Positions 9,104-22,963 of a DNA stretch of 64,000 nt are shown here, one piece after another. How positions within the stretch are numbered: position 1 is the stretch's first letter; each line of letters begins with the position of its first letter. Location: contig CM106585.1 of the NCBI GenBank assembly GCA_048013815.1, positions 16,988,001-17,052,000 on the forward strand, in the 5' to 3' direction. The stretch is from Setoptus koraiensis (taxonomy: Eukaryota; Animalia; Arthropoda). Under the pieces are notes generated by a model, which made no database searches, had not been told where the DNA came from, and saw nothing but the letters and a program-made list of their open reading frames with translations. The translations under genes and the position numbers were made by a program.

Positions 9104-12100
9104 TCAGCCTTTTTGGGCCGAGACGGTGTTCTGAACGCAACAACTCCGAGCAACGGATTCGAAGAGCCTAAAATAAATAGATATGACGATAACAGATGGG
9201 AGAAATAATAGTTAATATGAATGAAAATTAGCTCGTGACTGTGTAAAGTGCGTACTCGCTCATGAATCTTCTTCTCTACTTACTTTTCTATCTCTGGGGC
9301 ACACCGCACAAACTCGTGATTCCAAAACTTGAAGATGGGATTCTTTATAAGTTCAATAAAAGTTACTAGCAGGCCCCATGGGTGTGGCCTCATGATAATT
9401 AGTCGTTCAACCAAAACTCGAGTTATTTGTTCTTGAATCTGATTCATATTCGCTTCGGCGAACAAGTATAGCAATGCAGAGCTGAAGTAGTGGGTATGCG
9501 AGTTGGGGTATCTTAGTTGATTGGCGATGGCATTCAAAAGAAGATATCTTCCCTCAGTGTCCAAAGTTATAGCGAGATGGTGGAAAATGTCTATGTGGGC
9601 TGTGTTGGCGATACTAGACATTGTAATCGGTCTGGGAGCGATAGCGTTTATAGCTGACTGGCCAACGTATAAAACGACTGCGTTCAGCAGTGGAACGTTG
9701 AGCGATTCATTGGATGATGCCGAATCAGCCACATTAACAAGATACTGTGGTTTTGCCCTGAGATAGAAAGCCAATATGTTAGGGAAACCATGAGGTGTCC
9801 TAGTTCGTAGGTAAATATCGAGCTCATCTTTGAATGTTATCTGATTGAATATGTTAAGTTGAATCGAGCTTGTTTTGGGTGGTTGTGACATTTCAGGCAA
9901 CTGTTCCATCTTCAGATTTGGTGTGAACGGGTCGGGAAGTCGCATTTTTCGCGGGAAAGCACTCAGTACCAAGTTCCGCATTTGTATTGCATTACATGGT
10001 ATGACATCACATAGACTGTAGCAATATTCGCAGAGGAATTCCGGAAAGTCATGTAATAGAACCAAGAATACCTTGAGAGTTCCTTTATAGAGCAAATCAA
10101 CAGATGGTGGTAGTTCGACGTTGCGTAGGAAAGGCGCTTCAAATTTCACCAAATCTATGAGGAGTTGAGCGTAAAGTGCCCATCCTCTGGTGCGATTGTT
10201 CGGGAAGCCATTCAAACATTTTTCGGCGAATATTCGATGTGCCAGAAAATCTAACCAAGCAAAAGCGAATGATGGTACCTTGCTGGGTCTTAGAGTCCGC
10301 AACGTTTTGCAAAATTGGTTCAATACCTGGAATTGAATGTTTTCAGTAAGCGCATCTAAAGTGGGGTTTAATTGATTGAAATTGAACGAAGCTTGAGTTG
10401 GTATCCCTAGAGAAGAAGGTGTAAGTGTAAGCTCTATGAATAGCAATATCAGGATGCGGTAGTAAGCTAGATGCTGAAATTCCGCTTGGCGTGACTCTTG
10501 GTCTCTTATCGCGACCGAAGCTATGATGGATAGTATCTTGGAGAGCAGATGTATTTTTGCAGTTGGTCCAGGTGAACCGCTTGATGGGCTGGAAGAACCA
10601 GAATTCTTGATCAACAAGACAATCAGATGTGTGAAGGCATCCAAAGTGCCATAACACTTGTTTCTGAGGTCAAGAGAATTAAAACCATTCTGAGTTTGAT
10701 TAGCAAATAAGCGATAGCAGGATTCGACGCACATCTCGGTCGAGAGACGAAAGAATCTTGTTATGAGGTCATCAGTCTTGAGTATACCATGTGCATTCAT
10801 TTGTTGAACGAAAACAGGAAACATTTTGGTTGCATGAGGCGAGGTTTGATAAATTCCAATCCATTCACGCAATAATCGTTCTGTCTTTTCAATTAAACCT
10901 GGTGGATCACCATCAGCAGTCTCGCGCTGGAGTGCAATATTGAGGCTAGAATTTCCCAGTTGATTCTGAGGACTGGCATTTGACAGTTCAGTGAAAGCAT
11001 TAGAAGACTGCAGCACCGTATTGTTCTGAGATACGTAACTGGACGGTGTATGCCTACTACTCGATTGAAGTGTTTCCAGGCAGCTTTGAATTTCCAACAA
11101 AAGACCCGGACTAGCAACAGATTTGAGCCTTGAAAGCAATTCAACTGTCTTCGGTAAGCTTGACTCAGAGAACGAACCACCGAATCTGTGAATAAATCGT
11201 ATTACAACAGAAGGATTCATGGATTGTTCGGTCACTCTGACGAGTTCTTCATCGAAAGTTGCAGAATTTGTCAAGTTATTTTGTACAAGATGGTCCAGGA
11301 ATATCTCTGGTCCAGTAGACTTTTTCAGGTCGTGAATGTTGCTTATTAATTTGCTCCAAGCGTGACGAGTTATGTGTCTCGTTGTCGGTACAAATCCAAA
11401 GGTTTCGGCCAGTGCTTTCAGGAGAAGCATATGTAGCTCGCGACCTCGGCAGATTGTATTGTAATCTAGAGTAGTGGTGTAATCGAAAACCAATTCATAC
11501 ATAGAATCCAGTATTTTTGAAATAAGTAATTTATAAGTTCTGTCTAGTGGATTACTTCGCATAACACCGAGCAATTGTATTATTTGAGCTGTGTTACTTG
11601 CTAAAGTTGGGGCTGGTAGAGATTGTACGAGTTGTTGCAATTGAGGAACAAGTTCGCTCAGAAGTTCCTCCAAGAAGCTCATGCTGGTATCAGTGTTTGC
11701 GACACTCGGTGTAGTGGCGGTTTTAGGTTGGTCTCCTAGTAATTGTGAGAAAGCTGGGAGTCTTTCGGGCTGAGGAGCAAATTGGTTCGGAGTCATGACT
11801 CTTGATGAGAACAGTTGATTCACCAGGCTGTTTGCTGTGGTAGCGTTTAACGGACTTCCACTCCGAACATTGTTAGAGGGCGCGTTCCCTAATAGAATAT
11901 TTGACGTAGATGATGCGCTACTTACAGTAACATCTTTGAAAGGTGAGTTAGTGTTCAGGCTGGGCATAGGTTGATCTATGACTGCGTTCTTTGGTTTTTT
12001 GAAACCGGAAATATTTTGACCTAATTCCTCGTACATACGCAACTGATCTTGAAGTATGGGTCCAGTCTTCAGCCTTATTGGCTCTGGTATAACCTTAGTA

Positions 12101-13852
12101 TGATAGGCCAAAACCTCTTGATCGCAATAATGACGGCCCTCGGCTTTAGCATTGCGCCGAAGTTCATATTCATTCTGGAGAAGTTTGTCAAGTTCAGAAA
12201 CCGCTTTTTCTACAGCAGTTTTGATGATGAATGCGCGTGCAAGATCTAGGTTATCTTTGGCAATGACTGTTGCCGCATGATCTGACTGCTCGATTGGGAT
12301 GCATGCGCTGGCTCTGCTGAAAGCCATTTTTATGTTTGCAGATAGAGAGGTTTCGAGATGATCAGTGTCTCTGCAAGAAATCATCGCCATGTATGATACG
12401 AGGTGCCTGATTAGATAGTGTGCAGCTATACCCATACGGTTTTCTTCAGGGTCCAATGCAAAGTCTTTCTTGACAATCTGTTCTGCTGTTGATAAGCATA
12501 TTTTAAGAGATCTTTCAAGTACAGCTGGCAGCCATTCTGAGATAGCTAGCTCTATGGCAGGTCTTACAGCAGACCGCAAACCAGGTTGCAGGTTGAAAAT
12601 AGTCAAGCTAGGGTGTATTGTGATTAATGAATGAAGACTACTAGTATTAGTCACATCCAACTCACTGTAATTGAACTTACTGACCCAAGTCACAGGTGCT
12701 CGCTCGACTGTACAGGGTAGCACCGTGCCAAGCGGTCCTATGACCGAGCTAGTGACAGGTTGTGAGGCCATTGACGTCAGTGGTGGCGTTGTTAGTGGAG
12801 ACAAAGAGGAACCGAATTCATTTTGTCGCATCATGATTGAGTTGATTCCAGGGGTTATATGCTGTTGAGAGGCGGGAACTTGTGGAAGTGATGAAGCTTT
12901 GAATGCATGTTGTTGTTGGATTGTTTGCATTGTCTGCTGTGTAGATTGTTGTGTCTGTTGCTGTTTTCCACCCAATTGACATTCAATTCGTGAGTAATAC
13001 TTCTCATCATTCAAGATATTGCTCTGGCCGACTAACCTATTTAAATCCATGTTGAGGTTATTGAATAAAACCTCAACTTGGAACTCTAAATTTAGTTTCA
13101 GATTCGGCTGCTGTCTTAATTCGACCAATGCTTTTAGTAGTCCTAGAACAAATGGGTTGGTAGGCTTAAAAATCTTTGATTTTTGAGTAGTCCTCAGTAT
13201 CTCGGCCAGAAACGGGACAACGTATAACAACTCTTGTGTGCCCTTATGGTATGCCTCAACAAGCAAACCTTTCAAGTCAAGATCGACATGAAGGATGGGT
13301 TTATTACGGGCAAGAGTGAGAAGACCTAACCATTGTCCCAGGTTCTTAAGTAAAGTTCGGTCGCTAATATTGTCAACCTTCTTATCTATTCTTAAGAGGA
13401 GCTTGATGTTGCGGTAGGTTTCCCTCGTTATAACTTCTATCAATTTTGGTATCTTCAGCTCGTACAGGAAAATCGCGTACAAGGGCTGAAAATTTTGTTC
13501 CAGAGCGGCTCTTTTGGTCGAGAAATATTGAGCTATCCATCCATAATAAGTATCGTCGGTTCCGAAGAGCTCTTTGAACTCTTCGGCTTTCTGTTTTAGA
13601 TTCATCAATGATAAATTGTTGATAATGAAGAAGACTTTGTCTTGGACATACTCAGGAGGTGCGGGATAATTTGCAGTGCTGCCAGCAGCTAGCAGGTTGT
13701 CTATATTAGCATTATTAGCGATCGAGGGTCTGGTCGCAACGGGTGCAGGGGGCCCTCCAGTAACAACGCGTCGTTGTTGAGCCTGTTGATGAGTTTGGAG
13801 TTGTTGTAGAGGTTGTTGCTGCTGCAGAGGCTGCTGAAGTTGCTGCTGCTGT

Positions 13853-13884
<32 letters not shown>

Positions 13885-15972
13885 TTGCTGCTGCTGTTGT
13901 TGTTGTTGCTGTTGTTGTTGTTGTTGTTGCTGTTGTTGTTGTTGCTGCTGCTGTTGTTGATGCTGCTGTTGTTGTTGTTGCTGCTGCTGTTGTAGTTGTT
14001 GCTGCTGTAGTTGTTGTTGCTGCAGTTGTTGTTGTTGCAGTTGTTGCTGTTGCTGAAGTAGCTGTTGCTGAAGTTGTTGTTGCTGGGGCTGTTGCTGGGG
14101 CTGCTGAGGCTGCTGTTGCTGAGGCTGAGGCTGCTGTTGTTGTTGGGGCTGCTGAGATATAACTTGATTCTGTATTTGCTGTTGTAAGACTTGCTGTGCG
14201 GATGGCTGTTTGACACCAATCTGATCCGGTCGAGAGAAATATTTTTCATCACTGATCATATTTGCTACTACGCCTGGAGGAGGTTGCCTTGGGGCTCTCT
14301 GCAACAGAATGGAGGAGTTACCAACCAAAGTGAAAACCTCTTTCTGCACGTTTTGAGAAATTTCAGGTAGGTTATGGTGGGAATTAGTTGAAAGGACTCG
14401 TTGCTGTAAAAATGTAAGCATCACAGCTAGAGTTTCTGCGGGTAAGCTTGGACCCCCCATCGCTATCGATCCGACATCATTCTCTTTATTTGATCCCCCT
14501 AGTAAAGATAGATAGCGCCTGTTTAGAAATGACGCGATAGCCCTAATAAAGTTTTCTCCATTCTCACTGAACTTATCCATCAGCCATTTATCCAGTTTAA
14601 GATATTCTCTTCTTGATGCTAGACAAGCTAAATCTATAACGAAGGGGTAGCATGTGCCATCGAGCAATCTGAATAAGGTTTTGATATCTTGCGCTACATC
14701 CAAAATTCGTGATAGCCGTTGTTGCTGCTCTTCAGGTGATGATTTGATATAATGATCACAAAGTGCATGAAGGAGTGCTTGCTGTGACCACGACAACGGA
14801 GTGCTTGGCTTTTGTTGATTTGGAGCAATACTAGAGGATTCACACTGTAAGTTACTATTCCAGATACTATGCAGTATAATAGCCGCATTAGGATGAGATG
14901 CATTAAGAAATGAAGGTATGGCCATACTGAGTATTTCAGACTTAGCGGCTGATGTTTGACCAGAGACACCTAACAAACCTAAAACAACAATATCGGGGCA
15001 ACTTTGAACAGGCCATCTAAATATCTCCAGGACCCGACCGTAGCAAATATTATTGGATTGTAGATTCGGTAGATTGCCTGGTATAGTAAAATCAATGAGA
15101 ATCTGATACAGCCGCTGGAACTTCCAATTCTTCAATCCTGGCAGAGAGTCGAAATCTGGATGGCATTTTAGCAAGTCATAATATTGAACTTGTTGACCGA
15201 TATTGGGTGTGCCTGCTTGTTGCACTGAATTGGAGAGTTGAGGTTGGGTTAATAATTTAGCAATCAAATTATGTTCGATACAGTTGGCAATGAAGTTGAA
15301 TTGAAAATCGTGATTGTGTTGCCAAATTTTGCTGAAGAAGGCACTCCCAATTATGTAAGGTCCAAGCTTATGTGACGAGGCTAGATTCATGAAAAATTGC
15401 CAGAAATGTTGAAAGGCGGTTGATGGCGATGATGATATGTGCTTGCTAGCAGGTATTGTATAAGAGGTATTCCTGAAAATTCTATCACTTATAAAATCCT
15501 CATCATCAAAGGCATGAAGTAGTTCATGAATTGGCGATGACAAATGTTCGCGGCAGATATCTGCAAACAAATCAATTTCCTCACTCCTATTGGATGTATC
15601 TATACTGGACGTTACTGATGATTGGCCGTGATTGTTACTTGATGGCGATGTCGCCTGTTGGTCATTATCTTGCTGTAGATGAAGTAATGAGGACATCGAT
15701 CCACTACTTGACATTCCGCTGTTATTGGTATGTAAGGGGGAGTTTGATTTTTGTGGTATCTCGCACAATGCACACAATATTTTGCAGGCCAACTTTGGAG
15801 TAAAATCAAATTGTCGAAGTATTTCGACATTGAGGTGGTTATTGCCAACATTTTCGTTGACTACCAATGCCGCTATCTGCGTCTCCGTTAGCGACAAATG
15901 GTTCGAGTTTGGATCAATGGTGGTCATAGTTGTATGGTCCCCAATATGATGATCCTCATATTTCAACCACAT
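9104..15972 (-). CDS. CNOT1: CCR4-NOT scaffold subunit 1, lacking the TTP-binding domain
   Basis: Exons 15972-9284 and 9167-9104 (phase-2 intron; joined ...APEIEK|LFESVARSCC). Motifs DLACLASRREYLKLDKW, CAF1-binding MIF4G (KVFFIINNLS), DUF3819, and the NOT1 C-terminal domain (RPHPWGLLVTFIELIKNP). Start may be the later MTTIDP codon. Confidence 0.96.
13780..14185 (-). repeat. CAA/CAG polyglutamine tract in CNOT1
   Basis: Gln-rich block of ~130 codons, including 40 uninterrupted Gln codons at 13840-13959. Confidence 0.97.
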
Positions 15973-16670
15973 GAACTAATAGAGTTTGTATTTTGTATTA
16001 TTAATGGCTACCAATAATAATAATAATGTCTGTGATAATCTCGGGATAGTGATTGATTATAAAATAATACAGATTTTGTGTGTGTATATATCTTCTATTG
16101 TATATAATTATGTGTGATTATAATAATAATAATAATAATAATAATACATATGCTACCAACAAAAAATAGATAATAATAATATGCGTTGTAATTACACGAC
16201 AGTGTCGTAAATGGATGTAATAGCCCTAGATAATTACATATATATATAATTAGAATGTATCAAGTGGCTGGAGCTCTCTTGTGGTTATACGCGAGTGATG
16301 TTATAAGAGCACGACAGCAGAGAGAAATACAAATGTAATCAAAGGTCTGAAAAATAATAGAACGCGAACCACCAATCGGTGCACCGATAGAAGAAAGGGA
16401 GAAACGGCGAACGAGAGGGGAATTTTGTCAATTCAGGGTGAACAAAAACTTTTGTATGTTTCACCCGATAAAGAGCATGTGATATTGAGGATCAAAATAA
16501 AGTGTAAGTCTGTCGCTAAAATCGCAAATCTGTGCAAAAAAATCTACTCCAATGTGCACGCATTCGCTCGTAACTCCGGCGGTTTATTCGAATTTTTCAA
16601 GTTTTTCCCTGCTGATTCAGTTAGAGTTTGCAACAATGTATACCAAAGTTATCTCGTGATCAGTATGCGC

Positions 16671-16743
16671 GGCCTTGTAGTATAATGGACATTACGCCTG
16701 ACTACGAATCAGGAGGTTCCAGGTTCGACCCCTGGCAAGGTCG
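16671..16743 (+). tRNA. tRNA-Arg-ACG: tRNA-Arg (anticodon ACG)
   Basis: Cloverleaf: acceptor GGCCTTG/CAAGGTC, anticodon stem CCTGA/TCAGG with loop CT-ACG-AA, T-arm CCAGG-TTCGACC-CCTGG, D-loop AATGG. No intron. Confidence 0.95.
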
Positions 16744-16751
16744 ACGGCTAC

Positions 16752-16756
16752 TTTTT
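16752..16756 (+). terminator. RNA polymerase III terminator (T5)
   Basis: TTTTT 9 nt downstream of the tRNA 3' end. Confidence 0.8.
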
Positions 16757-18039
16757 GCCGACTTATATCTAGAAGTTCTTTTTCATTTTCATTCATTCAT
16801 CTTATGGCTCACTTCATCTTTCTTTCCACTAACAATTGTACTTTTAATTCTATCTAATATTATATGGTATTTTTACAACTTGTTCGAAAAATTGGTAATT
16901 TTGACCGCGGCTATTCTATCACTACTATATCATCGCCCCACACTCAGTAGTATAGCGTCCGCTAGCTAAAGTCAGCTACTCACTTCCATAAGCTCCAATG
17001 CCCAGCCAACTAGCAAACAGAAACCTTTTTAGCGCGCAATCTCGCCTATCTCAAAACTAAAGTGGCGCTGCCTAGATAGATGCACATAGTTGCGGGGAGT
17101 GCGTGAACTAGAGCACACAAGCTAGATTTTACATGGAAAAAAAGAATGAAAGTATGCTCATACGCAACATCAAAGCTTGCCCACCGAAGGAAGAAGTGAT
17201 CCAGTGCGCAAGATTGTAACTTATGGCCAGGCTAGCTAACGGATTGATGAGCAAGCAGCACAAGTCTATAGCATGGAGACCCGTATCAGTCTTATCAACA
17301 TCGAGCTCCCTAAATCGAATGTTGGAGCGAATGCAGCATACATCCAGAGAGCAACCGTGTATATGTAATAGTTTGGATATTCTCTGTAGCTCGGCACTGT
17401 ATAAAATCTGAGGATGCACACAAAAATACACAAGCACATAGACACACAAGCACACAGGTCGAAACTGCGACGATGGTGCGACTTGATGATTCGCAAATCC
17501 AACTAAATTGTTGTACGTTGCGTCACAAGTGCATCAAGCTATGATTGCTGTGTTACGTCAGTACAAGCTGTGCCAATGCGCACCACTTGTCGTGCCATGT
17601 GCAATCATTATGCATATAGTCGTAGTCACACTAAAGCCATTGGAATGTGTCTAGATGGTTGGCACAAATAATATAATTGGCACACTTTGTACCAGTGAGC
17701 AGTGTCAGAATGGCGAACTGCACTATTCTCTGTTACGCTAAAAGTCTACGAGAGAAAGAAACATGATGGTCACACTCACTAAAACTCGCTCAACCACTAA
17801 CGCGCTTGTGTACGTTACATCTAGTTCGCTGAGTGCTTGTGTGAGCAACGAAATGTATGCCCACGGCTGCATTCATAACGCTATCATGCTTGCCTTCTTT
17901 ACCATCAACCATTCCAGTTTCTTCTCCTTCTCTTCTAGTGCTTGTGAGATTATCAGGAGCCTTTATATTATTGGGTGCCTGTGTACAATTGAAGCGATCA
18001 TTCGCATATATTTATACAAGATGCAATTTAATTCCTAAT

Positions 18040-18370
18040 TATCAATTATATATCTATCACTATTTCGCTGGACTATATATTATTATAATTTTATATATAT
18101 CTATATATACATATATATGTATATTATATCTAAATATATCTATATATAAATATATAATTATGATCACTTTTAGTATTATCACATTATTATTACTATAATT
18201 GATATTATTATTATAACCACTAAAACAATCATTATTGCTACCCAAATACGGACAATTATTATTATTATCACTGGCAACTATTATTATAACTATCACTATT
18301 ACTACTGTACAATTATATTGACATTGTTGATACGTTGCCACTACGATAACTACAACGCATTTTAACAACT
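18040..18370. repeat. Very AT-rich low-complexity (TA/ATT) tract upstream of the CBP-like gene
   Basis: Runs of TATATA and ATTATT visible throughout. Confidence 0.85.
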
Positions 18371-18435
18371 GTTACTATTACCAAAAACACTAAAGTAAAC
18401 AATCTTTCTTCCATGTTGATACTAAACTTATTAAC

Positions 18436-21400
18436 ATGGAAGAGAGAATATCCAAGGAATTCTTACCTGTATTGGATAAACTCTACAATGCTGAGCCAGC
18501 TGGTGGCCCATTCAGGAAACCTGTCGATCCTGAATTGTACGAGTGCTACGACTATTATCTCAAAATAAAGCACCCAATAGATCTGTCTACCATCAGGGAG
18601 AAGCTCAACAATCGCAAATATGACGATGCCTGGAGACTTATCGCAGATATTAATCTCATGTTCAACAACGCGTGGCTGTTCAACAAACGACAAACCCCCG
18701 TTTACGAATACACTACCAAACTTAGTAAATTGTGGCAACAAGAACTTTCACCCGTTATGCAACGTCTTGGCTACTGCTGCTCAACACTCCACAGATTCGG
18801 ACCACAATTATTATTTTGTCATGGTACAACAACAGACCGTTACTGTCAAATTGCTGTTTCAGCTCGATACAAGTGCTATAATGATCAATATTCATATTGT
18901 ATACCTTGTTTTTCAAAAATTGAATCTAATTCAGTACAAATTCAGGATTTTTCTTCAGAGACTCCTCGAGGGGAACTTCCGTCACAACCGATAGATAAAG
19001 ATAAATTTGTCGATTGTACTAATGACCAGTGGCAATATGAAAGCTTTGTGAAGTGTGTTAGTTGCTCAAGACGAGTACATCAAGTTTGCAGCCTTTATCC
19101 AGCATCTGACGAAGAGATAGAAAATTGTATTCAGCATGCTGATTTGGAGCAGCAACAAAAAGATCAGTGCCAAGTACCGGAACAATTTAGATACTTGTTA
19201 GACCCAGATGTAGTGAACGAGAAACTTATAAATCTTAAAAACAGGAGGCAATCATGTAATGGTGCTGTGTCCTCCAAGAAAGCACATAACATTAATAAGA
19301 ATCAACAAAATCACGAGCAGAAATTGTTCGCCGAAAAAAATCCCTCGCGAAAATCAATCACCCAATACAAAAAAGAAGAAGGAATTAAGGAAAAAGAGTC
19401 TCATCAATTAACAAGCTTTATCAACTCTCTTGTTAATCCAAACTCAAATGAAGCCCAAGTTACTTCATCTTCACTTGACGACGAGCTGTTGGCTTTTGCC
19501 CGCGACGCGGCCGATAAACACCTTACTATTTCTGCCCCGACATCACCAGCTGCTCCTCATAGTTCTGGAGACTCAAGTATAAGTTTCAGCTCATCCGATG
19601 TCATTTCAACTACAAGCTGCGATTTCCTCAAGAGAATAACGGAAAAGGCTGAACCCAGTCTTACAAATACAAGACGTGATAGATTTTTGTGCAATCTCTG
19701 CTGCAATCAACAAACTTATGGTCGCGAGAATAGGCACCGCAAATGGAGTGCTCGCAGAATACAACAAAGCAGGATGTCTAGATATATAGAAGTTAAAGTG
19801 AACGAGTTCATTAAAAGCAGCGCCCCATCTGCTGGACCTATAACAATTCGAGTTCTTGCTGCATACAATGATAGGGTCGAGGTTAAACCTCAGATGCGAA
19901 ATTATGTTCAGCATTGTGCTGCAACTGACAAGCATCCTTTTTCAAAAGACTATCCAGAAGAATTCAAATACACAAATCGTGCCATATTTGCCTGGCAAGA
20001 AATAGATGGTGTGGACGTATGTGTTTTCGGCATGCATGTTCAAGAGTATGGCGTTGATTGTCCTGAACCCAACAAGCAAGTTATTTATCTGTCTTATTTA
20101 GATTCTGTGCATTTCTTCAGGCCCAAGGAGTATCGGACTGCAGTTTACCATCAAATACTTCTGTCATATTTTCGCTATGTCAAGAAACTAGGTTTCTTAC
20201 GGGCATTCATATGGGTGTGTCCTTCAAGGAAAGGAGATGACTATATTTTTTACCGCCACCCAACGGAACAAAAGATGCCAACTCTCAAAAGGCTTTCTGA
20301 TTGGTATGTCGATTTACTCGATAAAGGTATTATAGCCGGTGTAATCGAGCACCATCAAAACATATATCAATATGCGAACTCTCAAAATTGGAAATCCATA
20401 CTCAGCATGCCTTACCTTAGTGGTGACTACTGGCCAGGCGAATTCGAAAGACTTCTTAAGATTAAAGTAGAATCTCAGAGAGAATATGATGAATTCAAAT
20501 CAGCCCAAGATCGTACAACGAATGATTTAGACTTCGATTCCGAACTCCCATTGGATCTGAGTATAAATGCAAGTCATACTAGTCCCGAGTATTACGAGAG
20601 TGATGACAGCTCTAGTAAGAATTCATTCAGTCATGGTTTTAAAAACAATCGACGAAAGCGGAGGAAATCGAACACCTTATCAGGATATTTGAATAAAAAA
20701 AGGTATAGGATGTCGAGTATGTATCAAGAAACATCTTCCCAGAAGGATCATTCAGTTTCAGAGGCTTCGGATAGAAGCCGTGTATTAGTTGATCCAGAGG
20801 TAGAGTTTTCTCGTAGTTTAGAGAGATCACTCAAAAGGCAAAAAGAGGGATTCATAGTCGCTCATTTGAACGAATGTGATTGTTCCTCTTACTTTGAGCA
20901 GAAGCGTCGCGATGCTGAGCCCATGATTAAATGCGATCTAATGAAAGGCAGAGAGCCATTTCTGCAAACTGCCAGATTAAAGAATTATGAGTTTTCTACT
21001 TTGAGGCGTGCTAAATTTTCTAGCCTCGCCATGGTAAAACATCTTAGTCTGACATCTAAACTGACCCCACTGTGCAGCGTTTGTTATTCTTCAGACTGTC
21101 ATTCTAGCATCCACTACGCTTGCCCGACTTGCGAAGATTTCTACCTCTGTTCTTCATGTCATTTGAATACTCATCACGACCACAAATTAGAATTGACATC
21201 TCCTACTTTACTTCCGGACATTGATGACGATCATTTACAATGCTCAACCACTTCACATAAATCATCTACATCCTCCTCCTCCTCATCATCATCTACAGCT
21301 ATATCAACAAGTGTAACCTCTAAGTCATCATCTCTGTTAACATCCACATCGACACTCAAAAACAACGCAACTATAGAGAATCTCCATCACAGTACCAGGA

Positions 21401-21861
21401 GAGCCACATCATCTTTATCACATCAAGCCTTATTGCCCATACCTTCTCATCAGAATCAGGAGAAGCATAGAGCTGAAGACGAAGAAAACAATAAGAGGGT
21501 TTTATCAGACAGGCATACTATCTCAAGAGCACTAACATCTTCGCCACCGCCATCAACTATGAGCAATCCGTCGTACGAATCTTTAAATTTAGAGATCATT
21601 GGAAGTCTTATCACCCGAGCTCAAATTTTTCATGATGTTGATTTTGAAAAGATGAAAAACGAGTCTAAAGCATTGATAACCCATTACTGGTATTGTAAAG
21701 CTAAAGATAATTGCCAGATGTGCAGGTTTGTTATACTAAGTTGCAGCTTTATGAGTTTGACTCTCACCGGCCACAAACCCCCCTCAAATAATCACAACAA
21801 TAATAACAATAATAGTGGCAGTGGTGGCAACTCAAACAAATCCTCAGGCATAATGAACTAA
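18436..21861 (+). CDS. CBP: CBP/p300-family (KAT3) acetyltransferase core: bromo-RING-PHD-HAT-ZZ-degenerate TAZ2
   Basis: Intronless 1141 aa ORF. Bromodomain (PFRKPVDP..FNNAWLFN), GYCC linker, HAT motifs YLSYLDSVHFFRP, TAVYHQIL, IWVCP..GDDYIF, DWY, PYLSGDYWP, EFSTLRRAKFSS, and ZZ finger. Confidence 0.93.
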   Translation: MEERISKEFLPVLDKLYNAEPAGGPFRKPVDPELYECYDYYLKIKHPIDLSTIREKLNNRKYDDAWRLIADINLMFNNAWLFNKRQTPVYEYTTKLSKLWQQELSPVMQRLGYCCSTLHRFGPQLLFCHGTTTDRYCQIAVSARYKCYNDQYSYCIPCFSKIESNSVQIQDFSSETPRGELPSQPIDKDKFVDCTNDQWQYESFVKCVSCSRRVHQVCSLYPASDEEIENCIQHADLEQQQKDQCQVPEQFRYLLDPDVVNEKLINLKNRRQSCNGAVSSKKAHNINKNQQNHEQKLFAEKNPSRKSITQYKKEEGIKEKESHQLTSFINSLVNPNSNEAQVTSSSLDDELLAFARDAADKHLTISAPTSPAAPHSSGDSSISFSSSDVISTTSCDFLKRITEKAEPSLTNTRRDRFLCNLCCNQQTYGRENRHRKWSARRIQQSRMSRYIEVKVNEFIKSSAPSAGPITIRVLAAYNDRVEVKPQMRNYVQHCAATDKHPFSKDYPEEFKYTNRAIFAWQEIDGVDVCVFGMHVQEYGVDCPEPNKQVIYLSYLDSVHFFRPKEYRTAVYHQILLSYFRYVKKLGFLRAFIWVCPSRKGDDYIFYRHPTEQKMPTLKRLSDWYVDLLDKGIIAGVIEHHQNIYQYANSQNWKSILSMPYLSGDYWPGEFERLLKIKVESQREYDEFKSAQDRTTNDLDFDSELPLDLSINASHTSPEYYESDDSSSKNSFSHGFKNNRRKRRKSNTLSGYLNKKRYRMSSMYQETSSQKDHSVSEASDRSRVLVDPEVEFSRSLERSLKRQKEGFIVAHLNECDCSSYFEQKRRDAEPMIKCDLMKGREPFLQTARLKNYEFSTLRRAKFSSLAMVKHLSLTSKLTPLCSVCYSSDCHSSIHYACPTCEDFYLCSSCHLNTHHDHKLELTSPTLLPDIDDDHLQCSTTSHKSSTSSSSSSSSTAISTSVTSKSSSLLTSTSTLKNNATIENLHHSTRRATSSLSHQALLPIPSHQNQEKHRAEDEENNKRVLSDRHTISRALTSSPPPSTMSNPSYESLNLEIIGSLITRAQIFHDVDFEKMKNESKALITHYWYCKAKDNCQMCRFVILSCSFMSLTLTGHKPPSNNHNNNNNNSGSGGNSNKSSGIMN

Positions 21862-22963
21862 GCCCAACGAAAATATTATTATAAAAAAAACTTATCGTTA
21901 TGATACTCGAAATAATTTAATAACAAAGTATGTCCTGCATATTTATTTACTTCATTGTCTAGGTCATTGTCTCTGATACTAGAGGTCATCAGTGAATGAT
22001 ACCTAGTTATCATGCTCCCACGGTTGTTGTATTTTTTATTTGTTCGGTTATGTTGTCAGTGGACTCTTTAATCGTTGTTGTGATGTTGGTTATGACTTCA
22101 TGTTGGCTACTTAAGTGGCTTGACCATAAAAGGTAGCTGACAGTTCTGGAGTATTGAGGTGATAAAAAGAATTGATATTTGTTGTAAAATTTGGCCAGTG
22201 TAAGTTCATCGTGTGTCGGAAGATTCTAAATTTCACGAAATGCTAATGAAATTTTTGTTAACTTACGACGCTATGAGCACCCCCAAGATGAGACCCAAAA
22301 GGCACCCGCAAAATCCTGAGTACTCCATCTAATAATTGACTAGTTTCGACTATATTGATGAGAAATAGAATATTCTCTAGAATTCCCGTCGAAGCGTGGA
22401 ATAAAAGATACGGTAGTAACGCGACAATGCTTTAATCTAAAGTTTTACATTGAATCACGCGATAACAGGCGATACAACAACTGAAAATGTTTAGAGTCAA
22501 ACGACTTGAGGGGTCAGGTTAACGTCTGCAACATTAACTACACAACACAAGCTCATCGAGTGATGCATTTAAATCAATCGTTGTGTCCGTGCTAACTTAT
22601 CTAACATTTACATTTGATCCATTAGTATCAGCATTTTTTGGAGAGTAGCATTAGATCAGTTACTAATTCTTAGTTACTATGTGAACGGCAGTGATTGATA
22701 TACACACAGACAAAAAGTCGATCGATTGAATAGTCGAAATAGATTCGGATGATTCTATTCTTGATTCTAAATTACAATATGTATATAGTGTACAATGTAC
22801 ACTAATGAAACATCATGTACAGGTATATAGTCGACCAATAACATGCCAAATTGACTGGGCATCTACAATTGATTTTGAACTCGCTGAAATGTTGCACATC
22901 TAGTGACCAGTATGTCGCTATAGTCGCTATTTTACATGAACAGTTATACGGTTTTTGCCAATG

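What the first reader, a model, noticed from the sequence alone, without database searches (positions are those of the whole stretch)
18436..21861. Minimal CBP/p300: catalytic core without TAZ1, KIX or NCBD
Seen: the ORF starts at the first bromodomain helix. An in-frame TAA lies at 18391 with no convincing acceptor before the ATG, and no KIX/TAZ1-like ORF appears in the upstream 2.4 kb. The protein ends soon after the TAZ2 remnant. The acetyl-lysine-binding Asn (AWLFN), HAT residues (LDSVH, IW.CP, DWY) and a Lys/Arg-rich autoinhibitory loop are retained. Known: TAZ1, KIX, TAZ2 and NCBD are the transcription-factor docking sites. Inference: a KAT3 enzyme recruited via chromatin rather than activators, either a specialised paralog or a reduced sole copy.
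Basis: partly seen in the sequence, partly recalled or inferred. Interest (0 to 1): 0.8.

Follow-up and report, generated by a model that had tools for sequence, protein, structure and literature searches.

The report
Core-only CBP/p300 paralog of eriophyoid mites
This is a real, expressed, intron-free gene for a stripped-down CBP/p300 histone acetyltransferase (catalytic core only, no transcription-factor docking domains) shared by gall and rust mites; those mites also keep a normal full-length CBP, so it is most likely a specialised extra copy, not a reduced only copy.

Summary
ORF 18436-21861 (+) encodes 1141 aa: bromodomain, CBP-type RING, split PHD, HAT_KAT11 and ZZ, then one HCCC zinc motif where TAZ2 would be. 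TAZ1, KIX and NCBD are absent from all six frames of the 64-kb window and of five orthologous loci. The same HMMs find TAZ1/KIX at E 1e-15 to 1e-37 in mite control loci.

The start is solid. All 11 aligned orthologs (51-95% identity; about 30 exist in all) begin at the same Met. In six loci an in-frame stop lies 1-15 codons upstream. RNA-like contigs run colinear from 18174 without a splice. The catalytic and acetyl-lysine-binding residues are kept. dN/dS against a sister species is 0.078.

The only named relative is from Aceria tosichella, so the genome is an eriophyoid mite.

New here: other eriophyoid contigs carry a canonical multi-exon CBP (TAZ1-KIX-bromo-RING | PHD | HAT-ZZ-TAZ2) at a different locus, beside Eaf6 and an MKLP1 kinesin. 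Canonical-bearing species are interleaved with Aceria, which has the minimal form, in the kinesin tree. The minimal gene is therefore best read as an old, fast-evolving lineage-specific paralog.

I could not show both genes in one genome. Recruitment through chromatin remains an inference.

The parts
18174..18435 (+). Minimum 5' UTR. It holds the in-frame TAA at 18391-18393 and an out-of-frame upstream ATG at 18413 (51-codon uORF, weak context).
   Evidence: RNA-like contigs of runs X3/X4 start at 18174 and of X6 at 18236. They are colinear with the genome and show no joints. Stop and uATG.
18436..18750 (+). Bromodomain (aa 1-105). The Met start sits at the first helix; the acetyl-lysine Asn is N83.
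   Evidence: Pfam 3.5e-19. 180-bit alignment to the p300 bromo-RING-PHD region. M1 and N83 are invariant in 11 orthologs. pLDDT about 90.
18751..19101 (+). CBP-type RING and first half of the discontinuous PHD finger (aa 106-222).
   Evidence: Pfam RING_CBP-p300 2.4e-7 and PHD_P300 1.3e-4. The Cys/His ligands are invariant. pLDDT 80-90.
19102..19683 (+). Lineage-specific insertion of about 190 aa between the two PHD halves (aa 223-416). It is mostly disordered. A conserved helix motif S-LDDELLxFA plus SxP-SP sits at aa 344-372 (19465-19551).
   Evidence: Alignments A1 and to p300. pLDDT below 50 for 275-412, with a predicted helix at 347-359. dN/dS 0.089. The canonical eriophyoid gene has an intron at this position.
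19684..20523 (+). Second PHD half and the HAT N-terminal part (aa 417-696). It holds YLDSVH, RT, IWVCP...H...K...R..DWY.
   Evidence: 258-bit alignment to the p300 HAT. Pfam HAT_KAT11 2e-42. Catalytic positions are invariant in A1/A2. pLDDT about 90.
20524..20778 (+). Autoinhibitory-loop equivalent (aa 697-781). It is disordered, with a KNNRRKRRKS...KKRYR basic cluster. It is about 100 aa shorter than in most orthologs.
   Evidence: Gap between the p300-aligned blocks. pLDDT below 50. Alignment A1 columns 800-935.
20779..21060 (+). HAT C-terminal part (aa 782-875).
   Evidence: Aligned to p300 in block 3. dN/dS 0.020.
21061..21195 (+). ZZ zinc finger (aa 876-920).
   Evidence: Aligned to the p300 ZZ. 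All eight Zn ligands are invariant: C880, C883, C896, C899, C905, C908, H914, H916. Pfam ZZ is found weakly in orthologs P0022 and P0012. dN/dS 0.024.
21196..21570 (+). Ser/Thr-rich disordered linker (aa 921-1045).
   Evidence: pLDDT below 50 for 932-1052.
21571..21768 (+). C-terminal three-helix module with a single HCCC zinc motif (aa 1046-1111). This is the probable TAZ2 remnant.
   Evidence: H1083, C1087, C1093 and C1096 are invariant. hhalign to the second Zn site of TAZ2: probability 36%, E 4e-4. The TAZ2 HMM gives no hit. Helices 1047-1065, 1070-1086 and 1094-1111 have pLDDT 58-81.
21769..21861 (+). Asn/Ser-rich tail (aa 1112-1141) and the TAA stop. No NCBD or Q-rich C-terminus follows.
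   Evidence: Translation. The NCBD HMM is negative.

Best explanation
The ORF is a functional, transcribed, intron-free gene of an eriophyoid mite. It encodes a 'core-only' KAT3 (CBP/p300-family) lysine acetyltransferase: bromodomain, RING, split PHD, HAT and ZZ, plus a degenerate one-zinc remnant of TAZ2. It has no TAZ1, KIX or NCBD. It is a lineage-specific paralog that arose from the mite CBP gene before the radiation of the sampled Eriophyoidea. It moved to a new locus (CNOT1 - [AIP] - minCBP - opsin) and diverged very fast on its stem. It has since been kept under purifying selection alongside a canonical CBP (TAZ1-KIX-bromo-RING | PHD | HAT-ZZ-TAZ2, next to Eaf6 and MKLP1 kinesin). Shown: architecture, start codon, conservation, selection, catalytic residues, p300-core fold, transcription-like coverage, and a canonical gene in eriophyoid-clade genomes. 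Inferred: it acetylates histone or other lysines like the p300 core. It is targeted by reading chromatin (bromodomain for acetyl-lysine, ZZ for the H3 tail) and/or by a lineage-specific motif, not by activator docking. With TAZ2 degenerate, it probably differs from canonical CBP in autoinhibition and in H3K27 preference.
For: Domains come and the p300 alignment with catalytic equivalents. The AlphaFold model matches p300/CBP core structures at TM (by target) 0.81-0.87. About 30 orthologs have only bromo, RING and HAT in their precomputed Pfam domains, and the one named ortholog is Aceria tosichella. All 11 aligned orthologs start at the same Met and end shortly after the HCCC motif. In-frame stops lie 1-15 codons upstream in six loci. 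In L008 the next upstream ORF is only about 440 bp away. No TAZ1, KIX or NCBD is found in six-frame scans, with positive controls. dN/dS is 0.078 overall and below 0.17 in every region. The X3/X4 contig 18174-21538 is colinear at depth 45, against 4.9 upstream. X6 covers only 18236-21731. No joints are seen. Canonical CBP lies in L009, L010 and L011-13, and a 3' piece in L003/L004. The adjacent kinesin has Aceria tosichella as its best named relative (60% identity, against about 33% for ticks), inside a 38-sequence clade. In that tree Aceria, which has the minimal gene, sits in a 9-row clade (99) with the canonical-linked kinesin of L010. L003, L009 and L011 lie elsewhere in the clade. In the gene tree the minimal clade (100) and the canonical eriophyoid clade (95) join at SH-aLRT 93 inside Acariformes.
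Against: The two genes were never shown in one genome or sample. The position of the long minimal branch (stem 4.08) relative to the canonical eriophyoid sequences is unresolved. An AU test does not reject minimal + L010-canonical as a clade (p 0.59). The library type of the 'RNA-like' runs is not on record. The 5' contig end at 18174 abuts an AT-rich repeat that breaks assemblies. Enzymatic activity and targeting are untested. Pfam does not call ZZ or TAZ in the window protein.
Confidence: 0.75

Rival explanations
1. Reduced sole copy. In this species, or in its sub-lineage with P0001, the canonical CBP has been lost, and this core-only enzyme is the only KAT3.
For: No canonical CBP lies in the 64-kb window. 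Co-occurrence of the two genes in one genome was not demonstrated. The window + P0001 lineage sits on its own long branch and has further deletions. Eriophyoids have lost many conserved regulators (PMC7738191).
Against: Canonical CBP is retained, and evolves slowly, in at least four eriophyoid-clade lineages that are deeply divergent by their kinesins (61-69% identity to L003's). Those lineages bracket Aceria, which has the minimal gene. Both genes therefore coexisted for much of eriophyoid history. CBP is an essential hub in studied animals (general knowledge).
Confidence: 0.12
2. Mis-delimited gene. Upstream exons encoding TAZ1/KIX exist and are spliced onto the ORF.
For: Eriophyoid genes preferentially retain 5' introns (PMC7738191). 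The intergenic space upstream is 2.4 kb.
Against: The RNA-like contigs are colinear for at least 200 nt upstream of the ATG and include the in-frame TAA at 18391. The Met is invariant, with upstream in-frame stops in six species. No TAZ1/KIX coding potential exists anywhere in the window or in five orthologous loci. Upstream neighbours differ between species, and in L008 the gap is about 440 bp.
Confidence: 0.03
3. Decaying or non-catalytic duplicate: a pseudo-enzyme, or a dominant-negative reader that competes with canonical CBP rather than acetylating.
For: The stem branch is very long (4.08 substitutions per site). TAZ2 is degenerate. HAT_KAT11 scores are much lower than for canonical CBPs (146 against 216-280 bits).
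Against: All tested catalytic and CoA-binding positions are retained and invariant across about 30 species. dN/dS is 0.02-0.06 in the HAT. The HAT fold is predicted with confidence. The ORF is intact in every species sampled.
Confidence: 0.07

Closest known systems
Canonical metazoan CBP/p300 (Drosophila nejire; mite CBPs such as Halotydeus destructor P0122, Leptotrombidium P0038; eriophyoid canonical genes in L009-L011)
   Same: Same bromodomain-RING-PHD-HAT-ZZ core in the same order. Same catalytic residues, a lysine-rich loop inside the HAT, and Zn ligands of RING, PHD and ZZ.
   Different: No TAZ1, KIX or NCBD, and no Q-rich C-terminus. TAZ2 is reduced to one HCCC motif. An insertion of about 190 aa splits the PHD. 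The gene is intron-free and at a different locus. Only about 35-50% identity remains in the HAT.
Engineered 'p300 core' (bromo-RING-PHD-HAT[-ZZ]) used in crystallography and in dCas9-p300core fusions
   Same: Almost the same domain boundaries. The model superposes on 4BHW, 5LKU and 6GYR at TM 0.81-0.85 by target.
   Different: This is a natural protein, conserved across a clade. It carries extra lineage-specific disordered segments and a C-terminal helical module. The activity of the natural protein is untested.
TAZ2-truncated p300/CBP variants (PMC10475075) and TAZ2-deleted CBP (bioRxiv 10.1101/2020.07.21.214338)
   Same: Loss of a functional TAZ2 downstream of ZZ.
   Different: Those are mutants of full-length proteins that keep TAZ1 and KIX. 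The papers report hyperactive HAT (PMC10475075, abstract) and reduced H3K27 specificity and chromatin binding (abstract). Whether either applies here is inference.
Other lineage-specific KAT3 expansions: five planarian CBP genes (bioRxiv 10.1101/2020.09.08.287045) and short Planococcus citri CREBBP-like paralogs (P0031, P0051, P0060)
   Same: Duplication of the usually single invertebrate CBP gene, followed by divergence.
   Different: Planarian paralogs are reported to keep most domains. The Planococcus paralogs still carry ZZ/TAZ and/or NCBD by Pfam. The eriophyoid paralog has lost every activator-docking domain.
Plant HAC-type KAT3 proteins
   Same: KAT3 enzymes without KIX (Pfam columns).
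   Different: Plant HACs keep ZZ and TAZ and a canonical PHD, and lack the bromodomain. They are far away in sequence (about 35% in the HAT).

Membership tests
KAT3 (CBP/p300) acetyltransferases | HAT_KAT11 catalytic domain | tested here: met
   Pfam PF08214 at E 2e-42, 146 bits against a cut-off of 22.5. phmmer to p300/CBP core structures gives E about 1e-147.
KAT3 (CBP/p300) acetyltransferases | Catalytic and CoA-binding residues (equivalents of p300 D1399, R1410, W1436, H1451, K1456, R1462, W1466, Y1467; numbering from memory) | tested here: met
   Residue-by-residue alignment to 8HAG chain K. The positions are invariant or K/R in A1/A2.
KAT3 (CBP/p300) acetyltransferases | Bromodomain with the acetyl-lysine-binding Asn directly upstream of a CBP-type RING inserted in a PHD finger | tested here: met
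   Pfam Bromodomain 3.5e-19 and RING_CBP-p300 31.4 bits (cut-off 25). PHD_P300 at 22.3 bits is below its cut-off of 27, but all ligands are conserved. N83 is invariant.
KAT3 (CBP/p300) acetyltransferases | p300-core three-dimensional fold | tested here: met
   AlphaFold model: pTM 0.61, folded domains at pLDDT 80-94. Foldseek top hits 6GYR, 5LKU and 4BHW at E 1e-45 to 1e-47, TM by target 0.81-0.85.
KAT3 (CBP/p300) acetyltransferases | ZZ zinc finger after the HAT | tested here: met
   Aligned to the p300 ZZ. Eight ligands are invariant. Pfam ZZ is sub-threshold in orthologs only.
Canonical metazoan CBP/p300 architecture | TAZ1 and KIX activator-docking domains N-terminal to the bromodomain | tested here: not met
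   The ORF starts at the bromodomain. HMM scans of all six frames of the window and five orthologous loci give E of 0.2 or worse. Controls score E 1e-15 to 1e-37.
Canonical metazoan CBP/p300 architecture | Intact TAZ2 (three HCCC zinc sites) | tested here: not met
   Only one HCCC motif remains. The TAZ2 HMM gives no hit. hhalign gives probability 36% over 27 columns.
Canonical metazoan CBP/p300 architecture | NCBD/IBiD and Q-rich C-terminus | tested here: not met
   The protein ends 30 aa after the remnant. The NCBD HMM is negative. NCBD is also undetected in the canonical acariform CBPs examined, so this loss is not specific to the paralog.
KAT3 (CBP/p300) acetyltransferases | Acetyl-CoA-dependent lysine acetyltransferase activity | not testable with these tools
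   Needs a biochemical assay.

The most novel reading that the evidence does not exclude
Eriophyoid mites have kept, for their whole radiation, a second KAT3 enzyme that is a natural 'p300 core'. It would be an activator-independent acetyltransferase that reads existing acetylation and the H3 tail and writes more. Alternatively it is brought in through its own conserved DDELLxFA helix, which resembles an acidic activation motif and could dock on the TAZ/KIX domains of the canonical CBP or on another hub. Either way, it would separate catalysis from transcription-factor docking in a living animal with one of the smallest metazoan genomes.
Probability: 0.25. Interest if true: 0.65.

Novelty: new variant of a known kind. 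Interest (0 to 1): 0.5.

Why it matters
CBP/p300 is usually treated as one inseparable hub, with catalysis in the middle and activator docking at both ends. Most invertebrates are reported to have one copy. Here about 30 mite species keep a second copy that retains only the chromatin-reading and catalytic core, and it is under strong constraint.

That is a natural separation-of-function experiment. It can show what the core does without TAZ1, KIX, TAZ2 and NCBD: substrate choice, autoinhibition and targeting. It also documents gene gain and neofunctionalisation in a lineage known mainly for extreme gene and intron loss.

I found no mention of it in the Aculops lycopersici genome paper or its supplements, or elsewhere in the searchable literature.

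If the window's species had lost the canonical gene, the case would be much more surprising. The evidence here makes that unlikely.

Tried and rejected
1. KIX/TAZ1 protein search with a Leptotrombidium CBP. The 120 rows shown were almost all vertebrate, insect and tick CBPs, so it says nothing about eriophyoids.

2. Co-occurrence of both paralogs in one sample. Exact-protein look-ups of the canonical exon 1 of L011, of a neighbour gene of minimal P0012 and of kinesin P0256 gave non-overlapping samples, or a contig that ended 541 bp before the kinesin. The listing of cluster members gave no accessions.

3. Second KAT3 locus in P0012's metagenome sample (L090). It is an insect CBP with many introns, 85-89% identical to Nezara in HAT blocks, so it is irrelevant.

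4. Using hit counts to argue that a canonical paralog is absent. I rejected this: only 121 of the 8000 scored candidates passed E 0.001, probably because low-complexity words filled the candidate list. The 1178-aa last-exon product of L011 was also missed.

5. The gene tree cannot place the minimal branch within or beside the canonical eriophyoid sequences (AU p 0.59).

6. Earlier scan notes hold nothing on CBP, KIX or TAZ in this genome.

7. The bacterial promoter/terminator scan of the 3' region is not meaningful for an animal gene.

8. AIP-like gene remnant upstream: tblastn found none in the window.

9. Retrogene origin (5'-truncated cDNA copy). It is attractive because the gene lacks both canonical introns and the 5' half. 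It cannot be told from ordinary intron loss in a genome where 84% of genes are intron-free.
Full report
WHAT IS THERE

The window has one uninterrupted ORF at 18436-21861 on the + strand, 1141 codons. Pfam finds four domains:
- Bromodomain, residues 12-94, E 3.5e-19.
- CBP/p300-type RING, 107-148, E 2.4e-7.
- First half of the p300 PHD finger, 201-221, E 1.3e-4 (below the curated cut-off).
- HAT_KAT11, 455-770, E 2e-42.

phmmer against solved structures gives the p300 and CBP catalytic cores at E about 1e-147, in three blocks: bromo-RING-PHD, HAT N-part, and HAT C-part plus ZZ.

In that alignment the query keeps the acetyl-lysine Asn (AWLFN), YLDSVH, RT, IWVCP...H...K...R..DWY. In p300 numbering (from memory) these correspond to N1132, D1399, R1410/T1411, W1436, H1451, K1456, R1462 and W1466/Y1467.

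The ZZ finger is not called by Pfam in the window protein. It aligns to the p300 ZZ, and all eight zinc ligands are invariant among orthologs.

An AlphaFold model built on 36 sequences has confident bromodomain, RING-PHD, HAT and ZZ (pLDDT 80-94). Three long segments are disordered: 275-412, 697-781 and 932-1052. The model matches p300/CBP core structures with TM 0.81-0.87 by target.

THE ENDS OF THE PROTEIN

Eleven aligned orthologs, 51-95% identical, all begin at the same Met with M-[DE]-E-[KR]-I..K.FLP. In six genomic loci an in-frame stop lies 1-15 codons upstream of that Met. The upstream neighbours differ between species: CNOT1, an AIP-like gene, an HD-domain gene, RPAB4. In L008 the next upstream ORF ends only about 440 bp away.

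I built HMMs for TAZ1, KIX, NCBD and TAZ2 from canonical CBPs and scanned all six frames of the 64-kb window and of five orthologous loci. Nothing scored better than E 0.2 for TAZ1, KIX or NCBD. The same TAZ1 and KIX HMMs score E 1e-15 to 1e-37 on canonical mite CBP loci.

At the C-terminus, all orthologs end 30-60 residues after a single invariant H-x3-C-x5-C-x2-C motif. Profile-profile comparison aligns this motif to the second zinc site of TAZ2, but weakly: probability 36%, E 4e-4, 27 columns. The TAZ2 HMM does not detect it. The model shows three helices there at pLDDT 58-81. 'TAZ2 remnant' is a fair but not firm label.

IS IT EXPRESSED AND FUNCTIONAL?

Contigs of four public runs were laid on 16800-22300.
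- X2 is flat at depth 111, as DNA would be.
- X3 and X4 have depth 4.9 upstream. One colinear contig spans 18174-21538 at depth 45, and depth is about 110 beyond 21509.
- X6 covers only 18236-21731 and nothing in either flank.
- No joints were reported.

The loose ends at 18214 and 18279 belong to contigs that match only 18-23 bases of an AT-rich repeat. They also occur in the DNA-like run.

This pattern is what transcription of an unspliced gene with a 5' UTR of at least 200 nt would give. The library types are not on record, and the contig start abuts a repeat that breaks assemblies.

Against the sister species (L005; 95% amino-acid and 87% nucleotide identity), dN/dS is 0.078 overall. It is 0.02-0.06 in HAT and ZZ, 0.09 in the PHD insertion and 0.17 in the C-terminal module.

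WHOSE GENOME?

Earlier notes on the window mention an opsin, CNOT1, Crk and OGA, so this is an animal. Nearly all genes in the window are long single ORFs.

The closest relatives of the protein are about 30 unnamed sequences from Logan, JGI and ENA assemblies. One named relative comes from the wheat curl mite Aceria tosichella. Runs holding the sequence include phyllosphere metagenomes.

Eriophyoid mites have genomes of 23-33 Mb, with about 84% intron-free genes (PMC7738191; bioRxiv 10.64898/2026.08.24.746826). This fits the window.

THE TURN: A CANONICAL CBP IN THE SAME CLADE

Among the weaker hits were five proteins with HAT-ZZ-TAZ2 but no bromodomain. Their contigs are as compact and intron-poor as the window.

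The kinesin gene next to one of them has Aceria tosichella as its best named relative: 60% identity, against about 33% for ticks. It sits inside a clade of 38 sequences on a long stem.

On three further contigs of that clade (L009, L010, L011-13) the whole gene is visible:
- A first-exon ORF of about 1000 aa with TAZ1, KIX, bromodomain and RING.
- A small PHD exon, called as a separate ORF only in L009.
- A last exon of about 1100-1180 aa with HAT, ZZ and a full TAZ2.

On these three contigs the gene is followed by Eaf6 (NuA4; not among the called genes on L009) and then the MKLP1 kinesin.

The minimal gene sits elsewhere: CNOT1 - (AIP-like) - minimal CBP - opsin in L006 and L007, and, with CNOT1 inverted and AIP missing, in the window.

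PARALOG OR REPLACEMENT?

In the kinesin tree, Aceria tosichella, which has the minimal gene (P0022), lies in a 9-sequence clade (support 99) together with the kinesin linked to the canonical CBP of L010. The kinesins linked to the canonical genes of L003, L009 and L011 lie elsewhere in the clade.

The minimal-gene trees contain a 9-sequence clade around Aceria of matching size and internal structure. This suggests that both data sets sample the same species.

In a tree of the bromodomain-to-ZZ region, the 29 minimal sequences form one clade (100) on a stem of 4.08 substitutions per site. The four canonical eriophyoid sequences form another (95). The two join (SH-aLRT 93) inside acariform mites.

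The exact attachment of the long branch is not resolved. Forcing minimal + L010-canonical together is not rejected (AU p 0.59).

The simplest reading of all this is one duplication before the radiation of the sampled eriophyoids, after which both genes persisted. I could not place both genes in a single genome or sample, nor search the rest of this genome. Loss of the canonical gene in this particular species is therefore not excluded.

OTHER ANATOMY

The two halves of the PHD finger are separated by about 190 residues that p300 lacks. The canonical eriophyoid gene has an intron at exactly that point, after ...HHETIWPEG.

The insertion is disordered except for a predicted helix at 347-359. That helix carries an invariant D-x-EL...A core in S-LDDELLxFA, followed by an invariant P-x-SP.

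The window protein and its sister lack about 100 residues of the loop region, and also a KNSVDSIAARLSINK motif that the other orthologs share.

HOW IT LIKELY WORKS

Shown: an intact KAT3 core, conserved under constraint.

Inferred from knowledge of p300/CBP:
- The HAT domain acetylates lysines using acetyl-CoA.
- The RING and the basic loop regulate it.
- The bromodomain binds acetylated tails, and the ZZ binds the H3 N-terminus.
- Lacking TAZ1, KIX, NCBD and a working TAZ2, it cannot use the known activator-docking surfaces.

Published work on mammalian proteins reports that TAZ2 promotes nucleosome binding and H3K27 preference (bioRxiv 10.1101/2020.07.21.214338). It also reports that truncation at TAZ2 makes p300 hyperactive (PMC10475075). 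By analogy, this paralog may be less autoinhibited and less H3K27-focused than the canonical enzyme. That is a prediction, not a result.

NOVELTY

The Aculops genome paper and its supplements do not mention CBP, p300, nejire, KIX or acetyltransferase. The one paper that holds both 'eriophyoid' and 'histone acetyltransferase' has neither term in its title or abstract, and I did not read it further. Lineage-specific CBP duplications are known in flatworms, where most domains are kept. Short CREBBP-like paralogs are annotated in a mealybug. A clade-wide, core-only KAT3 paralog that has lost every docking domain is a new variant of a known kind.

Noticed in passing
window 16670-16745 (+): tRNA-Arg (ACG) lies in the intergenic space between CNOT1 and the minimal CBP gene. 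Its 3' part is also present at the start of the sister-species contig L005 (93% identity).
   Followed up: partly
window 18040-18330: AT-rich low-complexity block (ATATAT / ATTATT runs) just upstream of the 5' UTR. It breaks de Bruijn contigs in all runs, so it limits inference about the true transcript start.
   Followed up: partly
window 18413-18565 (+): An out-of-frame upstream ATG lies 23 nt before the start codon. It opens a 51-codon uORF that overlaps the start. Its context is weak (T at -3), whereas the main ATG has A at -3 and G at +4.
   Followed up: partly
window 9280-18435 versus L006:575-10000 and L007:1116-10000: In two other eriophyoids the order is CNOT1(+) - AIP-like PPIase/TPR gene(-) - minimal CBP(+). 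In the window CNOT1 is inverted, and no AIP-like sequence is found anywhere in the 64 kb by tblastn.
   Followed up: partly
window 20524-20778 and 19552-19683 (protein 697-781 and about 373-416): The window protein and its sister P0001 lack about 100 aa of the loop-region insertion. They also lack a KNSVDSIAARLSINK motif that the other nine aligned orthologs share.
   Followed up: no
L009:3436-3812; window 19102-19683: The second intron of the canonical eriophyoid CBP gene lies exactly where the minimal paralog carries its 190-aa coding insertion in the PHD finger. This is either an exonised intron or a shared permissive loop.
   Followed up: partly
window 21509-22300: In runs X3/X4 the depth rises from 45 to about 110 at 21509 and stays high past the stop codon, with small alternative contigs at 21509-21538 and 22038-22067. 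It could be 3' bias, a long 3' UTR (AATAAA at 22400), or an overlapping transcript from the minus-strand opsin gene.
   Followed up: no
L009, L010, L011 (canonical eriophyoid CBP); P0037, P0038, P0122: No NCBD (Pfam Creb_binding) is detected in the canonical CBPs of eriophyoids or of the other acariform mites examined. Limulus and insects have it. NCBD may therefore have been lost or become unrecognisable before the paralog arose. My NCBD HMM rested on only 8 sequences.
   Followed up: partly
L090 (Ga0058701_10003135): The metagenome that holds minimal CBP P0012 also holds a many-intron CBP gene. It is most similar to hemipteran CBP (85-89% to Nezara in HAT blocks), so it comes from an insect in the same sample, not from a mite.
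   Followed up: yes
P0031, P0051, P0060 (Planococcus citri): A mealybug has three CREBBP-like proteins of 940-1527 aa that form their own long-branched clade. This is another arthropod lineage with shortened KAT3 paralogs.
   Followed up: no
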